This document shows, piece by piece, positions 1-12,079 of a stretch of DNA of 64,000 bases. The DNA comes from Macrostomum lignano (lineage: Eukaryota), in NCBI GenBank assembly GCA_002269645.1, contig NIVC01000738.1, forward strand, positions 1 through 64,000, given 5' to 3'. Position numbers and translations under genes: made by a program. The notes under the pieces were generated by a model that was given only the letters and a program-made list of their open reading frames with translations, was not told where the DNA came from and did no database searches. The number at the start of each line of letters is the position of its first letter. Position 1 is the first letter of the stretch.

Positions 1-87
1 ACCTAACGCTACTTATAGGATGTAGAAACAGTTCAACTTTTCTATCAGGGTGGTCACCCTCAAAATTTTTTTTATATTTCGAGAAAA

Positions 88-3000
88 ATGCCAAAAGCCA
101 ATCCAGCAAGAGATTTAGTCAACAAATATTTTTTCAAAAGGCGTCTCATTTCAAGACAAAAGTAATTACTAAGAGAAGCATGCAAACAAAAGTTCAACAC
201 CGACCCTGGTCACCTGGGAAGCTATGAAAAACAGTTGGAAATCATCAATCAATTAGAATCAACCAGTATGCGCCTATAAAAAATTCTGCAAAGGAACACC
301 AAGAGAGGAGTCGCAACTTAGTTAACAAATATGAAACTCTCACTGGTGAAAAAGCAAAGTACCCACAAAATAAGCAGGAACAAGAGAAATTAGAGCAATT
401 AATCCATTTAAAAGAGTCGGAGCTTGCCACTGAAGAGATTAATTTTGCACAGACGAAGTTTACAGAACATTACATAGAGTACACAATCCCAAAAACGGCA
501 CCAACGGTACCACCGCAAACATCTACGACTATAAAGACAGCATCCAATCAGTTGTTGATCACACACTCAAAACACGCAAGACTTTAAACTACAGATATCA
601 TTCAAGATTGCGTTTTATATGCCTGCAAAACCCACTGAGCATCTCGAGTATTACATGACAACAAAGGCAAAGCCATTCACCCCAACAGACACACTGGATC
701 CTTTCCTTCAAGATGTCAATAAGAAAATTGAAGCGTTTACATCCAGAGGTTCCGGATGGGTCGTGGAGGGATTCAAAGAGCGACTGTCATGGTCATGAAA
801 TATGACCCACTTAAAGCCTCCTCTTATATAGAGCTCCCGCATAAGCTAGCCGGAAAAAAGCTTGCATAAATGTTAAAAATAAAGACAATTGCTGTGCTCT
901 ATGGGCAGTTCTTTCTGCACTTTTTAGTGTACCTCACCACCCGAAAGAACCTCAAATTATCAAAATTATTTCAACTACTATCTCATGAATGCGAAAAGAA
1001 GGGAATCAGGTTTGACAAAGGAGGCTGGCGATCTCTCAGATCCCAAAGCTAGAAGAAGTGTTTAATAACAAAATTAGAATCACAGTCTTTGAGTGGAGTG
1101 AAAAAACTGAGAAAGTTCAACCGGTCAGATGTAGCAAAGACGTTTTAGATCCGAGGGGAAAAGGCGGACTGAAGTGGATCTTCTAGTGATTGGTAATTTA
1201 CTAGAGGAGGCTCACTATGTTTGGATTAAAGATCTTTCAAGACTCATTCACAAGCAGTTGAATAATCATCACGAGGCTGTTGCCATCTGCCGCTTGTGCC
1301 TTAAGCATTACAGTGGACCTGAACGCTTTGAAAAGCTAACAGAGCATGAATTATCATGCGAGGATCACCCGACAAACTGCTCTCTTCCTTCAGCTGAAGA
1401 GAAGTATCTCCGGTTTAAGAACTATCACAAGATGGAGAAGCTCCCATTTGTTGTATATGCTGATTTCGAATGCTCAATCATGCCGGAAACTCAAAAACAA
1501 ACTCAAACTCAAAAACATGTCCCCAATTCAGTAGCATATGCCTTTATTAATACAAAAGGACTTGTTGAGTATAATTATTTCTTTGGAGAGCAGTGTGTGG
1601 AGCAGTTTATTGCCAGAATGTTAGAGTTGCAAAAAGTGATTAGCACCCTTCAACCTGTTCCAATAATGATGACTGAGGAGGATGAAAGCAATTTCCTATC
1701 AGCAACTCATTGCCACATCTGCAGGAAACATTTAACTTGCACTAATATTAAAAACCCCACCGTTAGGGACCACTGCCACTTACTGGGAAATTTAGAGGTG
1801 CAGCGCATAACACCTGTAATCTAAAGCTAAAATCGAACATTCATGATCTAACGATATTTTGTCACAACGCAAAGAACTATGACATGCATTTAATAGTTGA
1901 AAAAATCGGCATGATTCCAGACATACACCTTGATTGCATCGCAGAGAACAAGGAGAAGTTTAAGTGTGTTGATATTAAACAGGATAATTCGGGTACAGGT
2001 AAAATAAGACTGAAGGATTCATATCAATTTCTAGCTGCCAGTCTAGACGAACTAAGCAAGAATCTAAAAGATGAACAATGTACATATACAAAGATGTTTG
2101 CAAGTAAAATTAACAACACTGATGAATCATTTAAACTCCTGAGAACCAAAGGCTTCTACCCCTATGAAAATATTACTGGGTATCACGTATTTGAAGAAGG
2201 TTTACCACCACAGGAGAAGTTCTTTTCAAAGCTAACAGACTCTGGAATCTCTGACAAAGACTATGAGCACGCGAAGCATGTCTATAATTACTTTAATTGT
2301 CAAAACTTCTTCCAGTATCACCTGCTTTACCTCTTCACAGATGTGTTTCTGCTGGCTGATGTGTTTGAAACCTTCAGATCACCTGGTACACAGCATATGG
2401 CCTCGATCCAGCACATTATGTGTCTCTGCCTGCCACTAGCTGGGAATCTTTGCTTAAAATGAAATGGGATCAAGATCCAGATTGGTACATTGAACTTCTT
2501 ACAGACATTGACATGTACAATTTTGTCGAATCGTCAAAGCGAGGGGGAATCTCAATTTGCGTTAACAGGTATGCAAAAGCAAACAATCCCTACATTGAAT
2601 CTTACAATAAGGAGCAGCCCTCAAACTACATTACTTACTTGGACGCTAATAATCTCTACGGGTGGGCGATGAGTCAAGATCTTCCAGTTAGAGATTTTCG
2701 ATGGCTACCCTCATCAGAATTAAATGGGACTTTTCATTGGCTGCCATTTATGAGGTTGATGTTTACATTCCACCAGAGCTTCACGACTATTTCTCTGACT
2801 TTCCACCCTTCCCAGAGAACATCAAGTGCCCGAAAATAATCGAAACTCCCAATGATAATAATGGAACTTGGCACCTGTCAGGAACAGAAAAAGAACATAC
2901 AGAGAAACTAACACAGAATCTAAACAACAAGACACGTTACAAAATCCATTACAAACTGCTTCAGTATTTTATCTCACTTGGTTGCAGGGTCACCAAAGTT

Positions 3001-3917
3001 CACGGGCTCTTACATTTACAGAGGAAGCGTGGATGAAACCCTACATTGATAAGAACACCCAGTTTAGGACCAAAGCAACCAACGACTTTGACAAGAACCT
3101 CTTTAAGTTGGCCAACAACTCTGTCTATGGCAAGACTCTTGAGAATGAGCGGAAAAGAACAAACCTGAAACTTGTTACCTCATCAGAGCCTGATGTTATT
3201 CAGGCAAATATGTCAAAGCCAACATTCAAAGAACTCCATATCTTTAATAGCTACTTAGGTGTGATCATATTTTACAAAACCAAGGTGACGCTGCGCAAGC
3301 CGATCTATACAGGTGTCACTGTTCTCGACGAATCAAAACGTCTGATGTACCATTCTTCTATGGCATGAAGCAGCAGTACAAGGATAAAATGAAACTCTTG
3401 TACACTGACACAGACAGTTTTATTATGGACATTCAAACAGAAGACATTTATCAGGACATGCTGCAGCAAAAAGATTTGTTTGACTTGTCTGAGTATGATA
3501 ATCTTTCAGGACGCTGAATGGTGATCAAGTGTTTGACGCCACTAACAAGAAAGTGATTGGGAAAATGAAGGACGAGATTGCTGGTGACATAATCACTGAA
3601 TTCATTGGGTTGAGAGCAAAGTCCTATTTTATAAAATGTGAGTCGTCAGACCCAATAAAAAATCAAAGGGAATTCCGAAACGTGTGGTTAGGAAGGAAAT
3701 TAATGAAGCTGAATACAGAGACGCCTTGAATTGCAACAAAAAGACATCACATGAGTTCTCAAAGCTACAATCTAAAAACCATATTATTCACACAATTCAG
3801 CAAAAGAAGATTGGACTGTCAGGTGCAGATAACAAGAGATTCATTTTTGATGACAATATCAACAGTCTACCGTTCGGGCATTGGAGGTTAGGTTTAGGAG
3901 GTGGATATTGGGTTTAG
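88..3917 (+). pseudogene. polB: Protein-primed family B DNA polymerase (pPolB), broken by many -1 frameshifts
   Basis: Motifs across frames: RGSGW, PLKASSYIELP, NKDNC, HYVWIK, ExoI YADFE, DHCH, ExoII HNAKNYDMH, KGFYPYE, ExoIII YLFTDVFLLADVFE, PolA YLDANNLYG, PolB KLANNSVYGK, PolC YTDTDS (~3400-3420). The start at 88 (AAAAATG) is inferred. Confidence 0.93.
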
Positions 3918-3949
3918 GTTTGAGAGAAAGTTTAATAAACCTCATAAAA

Positions 3950-4351
3950 ATGACAACAAATAACTTTCTTGAAGATTTGGCTAACGAACTGGAAATCCCA
4001 AACTTTAGAGGAATATTTATGAGGGACACTCTGCCTGATTTTCCTCTAAGAAAGGAATGCGGCATCATGAACTTTGACACCACCGATAAGCCAGGATCTC
4101 ATTGGGTTTGCTGGGTGATTGATCCCGATCGCAAGCACAAGTGTTATTACTTCGATAGCTATGGGACGGCAGTACCAGAAGAGCTAAGAAATTATATGAA
4201 GGGAAAAAATAATAAAAAAATTTATCGCTCAGACTTTATTCTCCAAGGTCTTAGCAGTGATATTTGCGGTGAGCTGTGCATGACTGTTTTGTATGCAATG
4301 ACCAAAACACGAAAGACCTACAAGGAAATTATTCTTGGCTGTGTTTCATAG
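3950..4351 (+). CDS. Adenain-like cysteine (maturation) protease, 133 aa
   Basis: GSHWV (His), YYFDSYG (Asp), LQGLSSDICG (Gln/Cys). True ATG at 3950 in AAAAATG context. Confidence 0.9.
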   Translation: MTTNNFLEDLANELEIPNFRGIFMRDTLPDFPLRKECGIMNFDTTDKPGSHWVCWVIDPDRKHKCYYFDSYGTAVPEELRNYMKGKNNKKIYRSDFILQGLSSDICGELCMTVLYAMTKTRKTYKEIILGCVS

Positions 4352-11012: not shown

Positions 11013-11167
11013 TTTTATTGAGAATTTAATTTTTTTCAATGGGTAAGGACCCTGCGCTGATGATTTAAAGTCTTAGGGATCTGGTAGCACGTTGCGAATT
11101 GAATGTGGGGAGAAGAATGCAGATTATTTTTCTGATTGTTTTAGAAATGTTATGGGTGGATTTGGAG

Positions 11168-11435
11168 CTGTTATGCTCAGAGCATAAACCCTCAGAGCAT
11201 AACAGTAGGACACCTGTTATGCTCTGATTCTGTCAGGGATAATATGGATGGATTTAATGGAATTATGGAGGACGTTTTGTGAGCGAGTGCGACCCCCCTT
11301 TTTTTCTGATTCTGTCAGGGATAATATGGATGGATTTAATGGGATTATGGACGAAGTTTTTGGAGCAGGTGCGACCCCCCTTTTTTTCTGATTCTGTCAG
11401 GGATAATATGGATGGATTTAATGGGATTATGGAGG
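11168..11435. repeat. Subterminal palindrome cluster plus three 82-bp direct repeats
   Basis: Inverted repeats at 11171-11187 and 11192-11227 (14-bp stem). CTGATTCTGTCAGGGATAATATGGATGG recurs at 11224, 11306 and 11388. Confidence 0.9.
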
Positions 11436-11562
11436 AGGTGAAAAATTTTGTCCCAGAAGCCCCCTCATGCCTTCTACTGAAGCGAGAATTTCAACGAGAA
11501 TTTGAGAGAGCTGTAAAAGCGTTCTGAGCACTTGATGCGGAACAACATCGTGCACTGCTCAC

Positions 11563-12079
11563 CCCCTGTCATGTAGAATGGTCCTGGAGCCATTTTCAGT
11601 GTTGACAATCACCATGGAGACGGGGCAGGCTTCACCTTGGACTGACTGGCTCAGTGACGTGTCAATGGAGTGCTTGGCAAATACAGAACGGATATAACTG
11701 GCTTGGTTGAAGTGAATGCTTTCTGATTAGTTAGACTATTAGTACTACTAATATTAGTAATTATCGATTGGCGTCTGTGAATGGCAAACTCACTTTCCAT
11801 TGAATGAATTCTCCGAGGGCATGGTGCCTGCAAAGTACACAGGCTTTGACTCCAGTGCTGCCAGCACAATGGCATTGTGGGCTGCATTGCCTCCAAGCTG
11901 CCAGCTTATATTGGCTCTAAAATTTTATTCATTCATTGCTTAGTTAAGTATTTAAGCATTTATAAAATTTTAATTTCCAACCTGCTATCAGTGTCTTCCA
12001 TAGGGAACTGGTCAACTTTGCTGACCAAGTCAAGGCAGCAAAGCCCCACACAGATAATTGATCCAGATGTGTGTAACAT
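11563..12079 (-). CDS. KHK: Ketohexokinase (PfkB family), exons 1-3 only: 12079-11982, 11916-11794, 11697-11563
   Basis: Spliced in phase with GT/AG: MLHTSGSIICVGLCCLDLVSKVDQFPMEDTDSR ANISWQLGGNAAHNAIVLAAL...NYIRSVF...VIVNTENGSRTILHDR. Matches the KHK N-terminus, and exon 3 is 135 nt like vertebrate KHK exon 3. The remainder is not in the window. Confidence 0.88.

What the first reader, a model, noticed from the sequence alone, without database searches (positions are those of the whole stretch)
1..12079. Endogenous Polinton/adintovirus-like virus sitting inside a host ketohexokinase gene
Seen: three in-phase minus-strand exons (12079-11563) encode only the N-terminal ~119 aa of a ketohexokinase. 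The exon-3 donor (11562) is under 100 bp from the candidate viral terminus, and everything downstream on that strand is over 11 kb of viral genes. Established: KHK is ~300 aa, so more exons must follow. Inference: the virus is integrated in KHK intron 3, or it truncates the gene. The host would then transcribe through a near-complete viral genome, sense to the ATPase/core genes and antisense to the PolB/capsid genes. The ORF track misses KHK entirely.
Basis: partly seen in the sequence, partly recalled or inferred. Interest (0 to 1): 0.82.

Follow-up and report, generated by a model that had tools for sequence, protein, structure and literature searches.

The report
Endogenous virus abutting flatworm ketohexokinase exons
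The first 11.5 kb of a Macrostomum lignano (flatworm) genome contig is part of a Polinton/adintovirus-like integrated virus that abuts exon 3 of one of three ketohexokinase gene copies, but the contig ends inside the virus, so nobody can yet say whether the gene continues beyond it; this is a fairly ordinary kind of insertion.

Summary
Three in-phase minus-strand exons (12079-11982, 11916-11794, 11697-11563) encode the first 118 full codons, plus two bases of a glycine codon, of a ketohexokinase-like PfkB protein. Everything from about 11.45 kb down to base 1 is a Polinton/adintovirus-like element with PolB, adenain-like protease, A32-type ATPase, double-jelly-roll capsid protein, penton-like gene and six other ORFs.

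New facts change the reading. The window is bases 1-64000 of Macrostomum lignano contig NIVC01000738.1 (assembly Mlig_3_7), so base 1 is a contig end and this record holds no left flank. No integrase, second terminal repeat or KHK exon 4+ is present. Two full-length 328-aa KHK versions exist elsewhere in this neopolyploid genome, and the window copy is a third version.

As the sequence stands, PolB carries 11-12 breaks, nearly all frameshifts in one direction. Eight other genes carry none and one may carry a single frameshift. The breaks lie only in the last ~5 kb before the contig end of a Canu/Pilon assembly, so consensus error is a serious rival to real decay.

This is a new member of a known kind, of modest interest.

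The parts
228..3917 (+). Protein-primed family-B DNA polymerase gene (PolB), about 1,100-1,200 codons, N-terminal bound uncertain. Broken as the sequence stands: 10-11 frameshifts (all, or all but one, in the same direction, each equivalent to one missing base) and 1 in-frame stop.
   Evidence: PF03175 hits on two fragments. 109 homologous PolB fragments, up to 47% identity, cover 1141-3188 and change frame successively in one direction. Minimum-break count is 11-12, against about 43 for shuffled sequence.
3881..4351 (+). Adenain-like cysteine protease, intact (first ATG at 3950).
   Evidence: PF00770 Peptidase_C5 at 21.1 bits, E 2.7e-4, cut-off 21.3. The best solved-structure hit is adenoviral proteinase, E 0.005. 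0 breaks.
4356..5032 (-). Small membrane-type protein gene read as two overlapping ORFs. Possibly one gene with a single frameshift, in the same direction as those of PolB.
   Evidence: The hydrophobic stretch continues across the two frames. Minimum break count is 1. The N-terminus is homologous to the ORF that follows the 247-aa homologue in relative L002.
5141..5884 (-). 247-aa coiled-coil protein, intact, with an in-frame 84-bp tandem duplication. Function unknown (fibre or minor virion protein is a guess).
   Evidence: Homologue in L002 lies directly after the penton gene. Tandem repeat 5341-5508. 0 breaks.
5901..6701 (-). A32/FtsK-HerA-type genome-packaging ATPase, intact.
   Evidence: PF04665 Pox_A32 at 27.1 bits, above the 22.8 cut-off. 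Walker A motif GSSGSGKT is in the translation. 0 breaks.
6744..6933 (.). Nine tandem copies of a 21-bp unit in the 315-bp gap upstream of the ATPase gene. Possible regulatory array (inference).
7017..7466 (-). About 115-149-aa conserved ORF, intact, function unknown.
   Evidence: Conserved in relatives L003, L004 and L005. 0 breaks.
7378..8562 (-). 394-aa Gln/Pro-rich protein, divergent from the capsid gene, intact. Conserved neighbour of the capsid gene in relatives.
   Evidence: Synteny in L002, L003 and L004. 0 breaks.
8593..9879 (+). Major capsid protein (double jelly roll), 428 aa, intact.
   Evidence: PF21738 E 5.7e-5. Full-length relatives at 71-78% identity. Foldseek top 50 hits in PDB and BFVD are overwhelmingly DJR capsid proteins, E about 1e-10 to 1e-12, from a low-confidence model with pLDDT 54.
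9890..10768 (+). Penton-like (minor capsid) gene, intact. The name rests on position and size only.
   Evidence: Always follows the capsid gene in L001-L004; 44-66% identical homologues. No Pfam or PDB hit. The model is unusable, pLDDT 36.
10773..11039 (-). 88-aa ORF read inward from the right end, unknown, no relatives found.
11040..11449 (.). Non-coding right-end region with an 82-bp unit repeated about 2.6-3 times (11204-11449), a fourth partial core at 11127-11163 and a short palindrome. Presumed terminal region of the element.
11450..11562 (.). 113 bp in which the virus/host boundary must lie. Not resolvable here.
   Evidence: No second end, no empty site and no relative with this region.
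11563..11697 (-). KHK-like gene exon 3 (135 nt). Donor GT at 11562-11561. Read-through gives a stop at once.
11794..11916 (-). KHK-like gene exon 2 (123 nt).
11982..12079 (-). KHK-like gene exon 1 (98 nt coding, ATG at 12079).

Best explanation
Bases 1 to about 11,450-11,560 are the right-hand 11.5 kb of a Polinton/Maverick-type, adintovirus-like dsDNA virus. It is integrated in the germline genome of the flatworm Macrostomum lignano (line DV1, assembly Mlig_3_7).

Its outward-facing non-coding end lies just downstream of the exon-3 splice donor of one of three subgenome copies of a ketohexokinase-like (PfkB) gene. The insertion is therefore in what was intron 3 of that copy.

Shown: the host identity, the three exons, the viral gene set, the adjacency, and the fact that the record ends inside the element.

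Inferred:
- The join is biological.
- Integration used an integrase encoded in the missing left part.
- This KHK copy is interrupted, while the other two copies supply the function.

The element looks young, because eight genes are intact and a ninth may hold one frameshift. The 11-12 breaks in PolB are, by a small margin (about 55:45), more likely residual long-read consensus errors at the thinly covered contig tip than real decay.
For: Host and position: a 1,036-aa Ty3/gypsy ORF of the window is an exact GenBank product. It lies at the same coordinates in NIVC01000738.1 (455,515 nt, GCA_002269645.1), and the DNA is identical.

KHK: PDB ketohexokinases at E 7e-16. M. lignano A0A1I8I0I4 at E 1e-67. 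The window copy differs from each of the two 328-aa versions at 4 of 119 residues. This fits the three paralogous subgenomes described for DV1 (PMC10733133).

Virus: Pfam hits for PolB, ATPase, protease and DJR capsid. Capsid relatives at 71-78% identity share synteny. DJR fold matches.

Junction: host DNA starts after the last gene plus about 0.5 kb of repeat-bearing non-coding DNA, not at a random internal point. Element GC is 0.39-0.41, against 0.45-0.57 for most of the rest of the window.

PolB pattern: breaks occur only within the last ~5 kb before the contig end. Ten or eleven of the 11 frameshifts go in one direction, there is only 1 stop, and there are 0 breaks in about 6 kb of other coding sequence. 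The assembly was Canu 1.4 polished with Pilon only, in a genome where 93% of read pairs multi-map (PMC5730564; PMC10733133).
Against: - No integrase, second terminal repeat or target-site duplication can be seen.
- No KHK exon 4+ is in the 64 kb.
- 36% of the assembly length lies in chimeric scaffolds, and contig ends are where misjoins and poor consensus concentrate.
- The PolB frame changes are not enriched at homopolymer runs and are spread evenly along the gene. This does not particularly favour sequencing error.
- Relative L002 has further genes after the penton gene where this element ends, so the 'right end' might be a rearranged or truncated end.
- Neither the KHK stub nor any viral ORF is an annotated product, so there is no transcript support.
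Confidence: 0.62

Rival explanations
1. Assembly artefact. The host-virus junction at about 11.5 kb is a chimeric join made by the assembler at a contig tip. The viral DNA would come from another locus, another subgenome copy or an episomal or exogenous virus in the culture, and KHK is not interrupted at all.
For: The element sits at the extreme end of the contig. 1,131 scaffolds making up 36% of Mlig_3_7 length are chimeric between subgenomes, and most read pairs multi-map (PMC10733133). Consensus quality seems to fall towards base 1.
Against: The join falls exactly beyond the last gene and the terminal non-coding repeats of the element, and exactly behind a splice donor of the host gene. A random misjoin would more likely fall inside a viral gene. 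Elements of this class encode integrases and are commonly found endogenised in animal genomes (PMC8502044).
Confidence: 0.12
2. The PolB breaks are real. The element is replication-dead, and its ten other genes are intact either because the polymerase part is older (a recombinant or mosaic copy) or because the virion module is kept by selection or by helper-dependent spread.
For: Taken at face value there are 11-12 breaks in PolB and none in eight other genes. The frame changes are confirmed against homologues and are not tied to homopolymers. Degraded adintovirus sequences are common in animal germlines (PMC8502044).
Against: Uniform neutral decay cannot give 11-12 breaks in 3.7 kb and at most 1 in the remaining ~6.8 kb of coding sequence. 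The broken stretch coincides with the last kilobases of a contig. There is a near-total one-direction bias, with a single stop among 11-12 breaks. The PolB region still needs only 12 breaks against about 43 for shuffled sequence.
Confidence: 0.3
3. The three KHK exons are a dead 5' gene fragment (for example a partial duplicate or a copy truncated by deletion or rearrangement), and no exons lie beyond the element. The virus either caused the truncation or merely landed next to a fragment.
For: No residues 120-328 are encoded in 64 kb. Two full-length versions exist elsewhere. Large indels dominate the differences between the paralogous copies in this genome. No annotated product corresponds to this locus.
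Against: All three exons are open with canonical splice sites and differ from each full-length copy at only 4 of 119 residues. Exons 1-2 are identical to P0123, so there is no sign of decay. Downstream exons would lie beyond the contig end in any case.
Confidence: 0.2

Closest known systems
Adintoviruses (proposed Adintoviridae; Starrett et al. 2021, PMC8502044; Buck et al. 2024, PMC11071296)
   Same: Animal host. pfam03175-type ('Alpha') PolB, adenain-like protease, FtsK/HerA-A32 ATPase, double-jelly-roll hexon followed by a penton gene, and small membrane-type accessory ORFs. A more distant relative (L005) has a weak Adeno_PX match. These viruses are often endogenised.
   Different: No rve integrase in the part held. 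The OTU-like N-terminal domain of PolB was not detectable. The capsid protein found no named adintovirus hexon in the sequence search; the 9 hits were all anonymous metagenome or SRA contigs. No flatworm host was found in the searchable literature.
Polintons/Mavericks (self-synthesising virus-like transposons of eukaryotes)
   Same: PolB plus protease plus ATPase plus capsid module. Size class above 11.5 kb. Non-coding repeat-bearing end next to host DNA. Insertion within a host gene region.
   Different: The defining integrase, terminal inverted repeats and 6-bp target duplication cannot be shown, because the left end is missing.
Macrostomum lignano PfkB/ketohexokinase-like proteins A0A1I8I0I4 (P0123) and A0A1I8HQ02 (P0271), 328 aa
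   Same: Residues 1-119 are 96.6% identical to the window's spliced exons, and the exon 2/3 junction residues agree.
   Different: The window version has its own combination of variants (4 differences from each). In this record it lacks everything after residue 119, including the C-terminal DTLGAGD nucleotide-binding region.

Membership tests
Polinton/Maverick | Protein-primed family-B DNA polymerase (pfam03175) | tested here: met
   PF03175 at 27.2 bits, above the 25.8 cut-off, on one fragment, with a second fragment at E 1e-4. 109 homologous fragments. The gene is broken 11-12 times as it stands.
Polinton/Maverick | Retrovirus-like (rve) integrase | tested here: inconclusive
   None among the ORFs and stop-free segments of 1-11,560 that were scanned. 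The only rve hit in the window belongs to a Ty3/gypsy element at 63.5 kb. The element is cut by the contig end, so the gene may lie in the missing part.
Polinton/Maverick | Terminal inverted repeats | tested here: inconclusive
   No inverted partner of 11,040-11,560 anywhere in 1-14,000, and no similarity elsewhere in the window. The left end is absent.
Polinton/Maverick | 6-bp target-site duplication | not testable with these tools
   Only one end is in the record.
Polinton/Maverick | Virion module: DJR major capsid protein, penton, A32-type ATPase, adenain-like protease | tested here: met
   The penton is named by synteny only.
Adintoviridae (proposed) | Animal host | tested here: met
   Contig of Macrostomum lignano GCA_002269645.1.
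Adintoviridae (proposed) | PolB with N-terminal OTU-like domain | tested here: inconclusive
   No Pfam hit on the N-terminal fragments. The published assignment rests on structure-aware searches that I could not run on a broken gene without joining its frames.
Adintoviridae (proposed) | Hexon recognisable by plain BLASTP against reference adintovirus hexons | tested here: inconclusive
   The word-indexed search of 5.8 billion proteins gave 9 hits, none named. Structure search lists one 'Adintovirus sp.' protein among general DJR hits at 9% identity. No reference hexon was available for a direct comparison.
Adintoviridae (proposed) | pX-like core protein domain | tested here: not met
   No Adeno_PX hit in any window ORF. 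There is a weak hit only in the distant relative L005.
Ketohexokinase (PfkB family) | N-terminal substrate-binding region alignable to solved KHK | tested here: met
   Residues 7-117 align with KHK 25-132, E 7e-16.
Ketohexokinase (PfkB family) | C-terminal nucleotide-binding and catalytic region (DTLGAGD motif) | tested here: not met
   tblastn of the 328-aa M. lignano protein finds only residues 1-119 in the 64 kb. In this record the locus is a gene fragment.

The most novel reading that the evidence does not exclude
The PolB breaks are real while ten other genes, including the whole virion module, are kept open. On that reading a flatworm genome holds a polymerase-dead element whose capsid, penton, packaging ATPase and protease genes are maintained by selection. 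This would be either a host-retained particle-forming module or a non-autonomous virus that spreads with help from intact copies.
Probability: 0.1. Interest if true: 0.7.

Novelty: new member of a known kind. Interest (0 to 1): 0.3.

Why it matters
If the junction is real, M. lignano carries a young-looking adintovirus/Polinton-like element with an intact virion module. M. lignano is a laboratory flatworm with transgenesis, inbred lines and three recently diverged subgenomes. Comparing the three KHK copies would date the insertion relative to the genome duplication. It would also give a clean example of how large insertions drive divergence between paralogous copies. I found no report of this virus class in flatworms in the literature I could search. 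The KHK link itself is probably incidental, because two other full-length versions exist, so a metabolic consequence is unlikely.

Tried and rejected
**Searches that found nothing**
- Exact-product look-ups of the capsid protein, ATPase, penton, protease, the 394-aa, 247-aa and small ORFs, two PolB ORFs and the 119-aa KHK stub: none is in the collection.
- Look-ups of both full-length M. lignano KHK proteins to fetch the paralogous loci and compare intron 3: not on record.
- IMG/VR scans with the capsid protein and with a 9-sequence alignment: no relative. GenBank phage collection: none.
- Capsid and penton profiles against PDB sequences: nothing. ATPase against PDB: nothing.
- Self-comparison of the element with the other 52 kb by blastn and tblastx: no second copy, no solo terminal repeat.
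- Rfam and tRNA scans: nothing.
- Accession numbers of the samples that hold relatives: no paper found.

**Models that failed**
The single-sequence model is unusable.

**Ideas considered and rejected**
- A homopolymer-slippage explanation of the PolB frameshifts: there is no enrichment.
- PolB relatives on longer contigs (L007, L010) as full-length comparators. L007 is a mirror-image contig with PolB in several ORFs, and L010 carries some bacterial-type genes in its left part.
- KHK exons captured by the virus: host DNA continues for 450 kb and the exons keep host introns.

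
Full report
**What the window is.** A 1,036-aa Ty3/gypsy ORF at 60407-63517 is an exact GenBank product. All named members of its cluster are Macrostomum lignano proteins. The ORF lies at the same coordinates, 60407-63517, in contig NIVC01000738.1 (455,515 nt) of assembly GCA_002269645.1, also called Mlig_3_7. The fetched DNA is identical to window 50407-64000. The window is therefore bases 1-64000 of that contig, and base 1 is a contig end. 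This is the most important fact for the finding: the viral element does not merely run off the window, it runs off the record.

**The KHK exons.** Read on the minus strand, the exons are:
- Exon 1: 12079-11982 (ATG at 12079).
- Exon 2: 11916-11794.
- Exon 3: 11697-11563 (135 nt).

All have AG acceptors and GT donors and are in phase with one another. The spliced peptide matches solved ketohexokinases, best E 7e-16, with residues 7-117 aligned to 25-132. In an exhaustive search its best hit is a 328-aa protein at E 1e-67 and 96% identity. That protein is M. lignano 'PfkB domain-containing protein' A0A1I8I0I4, which has a sister entry A0A1I8HQ02.

The alignment fixes the exon 2/3 junction as ...SFNGN|YIRSVF. 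It also shows that the window version differs from each of the two proteins at 4 of 119 residues, at different places in each. So there are three versions. This agrees with the published finding that line DV1 holds three paralogous subgenomes (S, L1, L2) that differ by about 1-2% in sequence and mostly by large indels (PMC10733133).

A tblastn search with the 328-aa protein finds only residues 1-119 in the whole 64 kb. Reading through the exon-3 donor meets a stop codon immediately.

**The viral genes.** Going from the KHK donor towards base 1, the features are:
- A non-coding stretch with an 82-bp unit repeated about three times (11204-11449), plus a partial fourth core.
- An 88-aa ORF (minus strand).
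- A penton-like gene at 9890-10768 (plus strand).
- The major capsid protein at 8593-9879 (plus strand).
- A 394-aa Gln/Pro-rich protein at 7378-8562 (minus strand).
- A conserved small ORF at 7017-7466 (minus strand).
- A 21-bp x 9 tandem array at 6744-6933.
- An A32/FtsK-type ATPase at 5901-6701 (minus strand).
- A 247-aa coiled-coil protein at 5141-5884 (minus strand).
- A small membrane-type gene at 4356-5032 (minus strand).
- An adenain-like protease at 3881-4351 (plus strand).
- PolB, from roughly 228-620 to 3917 (plus strand).

The Pfam support is modest but consistent:
- PolB PF03175 and Pox_A32 are above their cut-offs.
- Peptidase_C5 is 0.2 bits below its cut-off.
- The DJR-like domain scores E 5.7e-5.

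Further support:
- Adenain is the best solved-structure hit for the protease.
- The capsid protein has nine relatives. Four of them are full-length at 71-78% identity, and all nine carry PF21738.
- The AlphaFold model of the capsid protein is poor (pLDDT 54). Even so, its top 50 PDB and BFVD matches are overwhelmingly double-jelly-roll capsid proteins: iridovirus, PBCV-1, Sputnik, mavirus, PRD1, one 'Adintovirus sp.' and one 'MELD virus' entry.
- The penton name rests on position only.

Relatives occur only on short anonymous metagenome or SRA contigs. These share the order 394-aa gene / capsid / penton at 65-74% nucleotide identity. No integrase is present in the 11.5 kb. The only rve domain in the window belongs to the retrotransposon at 63.5 kb.

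**State of the genes.** As the sequence stands, PolB needs a minimum of 11-12 breaks to be read through. These are 10-11 frameshifts, all or all but one in the same direction (each equivalent to one missing base), and one in-frame stop. Homologous PolB fragments confirm successive same-direction frame changes across the part they cover.

The membrane-type gene at 4356-5032 may hold one further frameshift of the same direction. The other eight genes, about 6 kb of coding sequence, have none.

Uniform decay cannot produce this contrast. All breaks lie in the last ~5 kb before the contig end. The assembly was made with Canu 1.4 from PacBio reads and polished only with Pilon (PMC5730564), in a genome where 93% of read pairs multi-map. 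Reads anchored in the unique KHK flank would thin out with distance into a long repeat. That predicts exactly such a gradient of consensus quality.

Against this, the frame changes are not enriched at homopolymer runs and are evenly spread along PolB. I rate consensus error slightly ahead of real decay and cannot settle the question here.

**Boundaries.** The right boundary lies somewhere in 11450-11562. Nothing in the window lets me place it:
- There is no inverted partner and no second copy.
- There is no empty paralogous site.
- The one relative that extends past the penton gene (L002) has different content there. It carries homologues of the window's 247-aa gene and of the start of the membrane-type gene, which in the window sit 5 kb away on the other strand. 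Gene order therefore differs within this group.

The left boundary is not in the record.

**What it most likely is.** The best explanation is a germline-integrated Polinton/adintovirus-like virus inserted in intron 3 of one of three KHK copies (confidence about 0.6). The strongest internal argument that the join is biological is its position. Host DNA begins just beyond the last gene and the terminal non-coding repeats, and it begins directly behind a splice donor. A random misjoin would more probably fall within a viral gene.

The rivals are:
- A misjoin at the contig tip (0.12; 36% of the assembly length lies in chimeric scaffolds).
- A KHK stub with no exons beyond the element (0.2).
- On the separate question of the element's state, a truly polymerase-dead element (0.3).

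Whether the host transcribes through the element is untested. Neither the stub nor any viral ORF is an annotated product.

**Comparison with what is known.** The gene set and the animal host match the adintovirus description (PMC8502044; PMC11071296) and the wider Polinton/Maverick class. Membership cannot be certified for four reasons:
- The integrase, inverted ends and target duplication are unobservable.
- The OTU-like PolB domain was not detected.
- No pX domain was found in the window's ORFs.
- The capsid protein did not reach any named adintovirus hexon by sequence.

'Adintovirus-like Polinton-type element' is the safe label. I found no report of such elements in Macrostomum or other flatworms in the searchable library. 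That library is incomplete.

**Verdict.**
- The headline claim ('inside a host KHK gene') is plausible but unproven. It is weakened by the contig end and by the existence of two other full-length KHK versions.
- 'Near-complete' is overstated.
- Novelty: a new member of a known kind.
- Interest: 0.3.

Noticed in passing
window 1 (= NIVC01000738.1 base 1): The window starts at a contig end of the M. lignano Mlig_3_7 assembly. The viral element is cut by the assembly, not by the window.
   Followed up: yes
window 6744-6933: Nine near-perfect tandem copies of a 21-bp unit lie in the gap just upstream of the packaging ATPase gene inside the element. This may be a regulatory array. Conservation in relatives is unknown because their contigs do not reach it.
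   Followed up: partly
window 5341-5508: An in-frame 84-bp tandem duplication (80% identity) sits inside the 247-aa coiled-coil gene and duplicates a 28-residue motif.
   Followed up: no
L002 2915-3700 vs window 4356-5884: In relative L002, the homologues of the 247-aa gene and of the following small gene sit directly after the penton gene on the same strand. In the window they lie about 5 kb away on the opposite strand, so gene order is rearranged within this virus group.
   Followed up: partly
L005 1246-1620: A more distant relative (capsid 44% identical) has a weak Adeno_PX (adenovirus core protein X) match and a different gene order (penton, pX, small ORF, capsid, all on one strand).
   Followed up: no
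L007 (JGI 3300042715, 13.6-kb contig): A mirror-image (palindromic) metagenome contig in which a related PolB appears as four consecutive ORFs. The same 390-aa piece recurs exactly in three samples. This could reflect an alternative genetic code or an assembly hairpin.
   Followed up: no
window 60407-64000: A Ty3/gypsy retrotransposon. Its 1,036-aa gag-pol ORF is annotated in GenBank, and its integrase core continues in the same frame after a single in-frame stop. The family has many M. lignano copies.
   Followed up: partly
window 58242-59246: A mariner-type transposase ORF (Transposase_1, HTH_32) lies within the span of an annotated Asparaginase_2 gene (record 56798-59968, minus strand).
   Followed up: no
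window 12100-14400: A very AT-rich stretch (GC 0.22-0.33) lies between the KHK start and a divergently oriented protein-kinase gene. The first kinase exon starts near 14463 (Pkinase E 2e-24).
   Followed up: partly
window 22530-23705: A single-exon 392-aa ORF with a LicD-family domain (E 3.5e-15). The exact product is not in the protein collection.
   Followed up: partly
window 24.4-30.1, 33.8-35.1, 45.0-45.9, 46.8-50.0, 54.2-58.0 kb: Many long minisatellite arrays stay open in several frames at once, typical of the repeat-rich M. lignano genome. A CUB-domain exon lies at 46343-46810 (minus strand).
   Followed up: no
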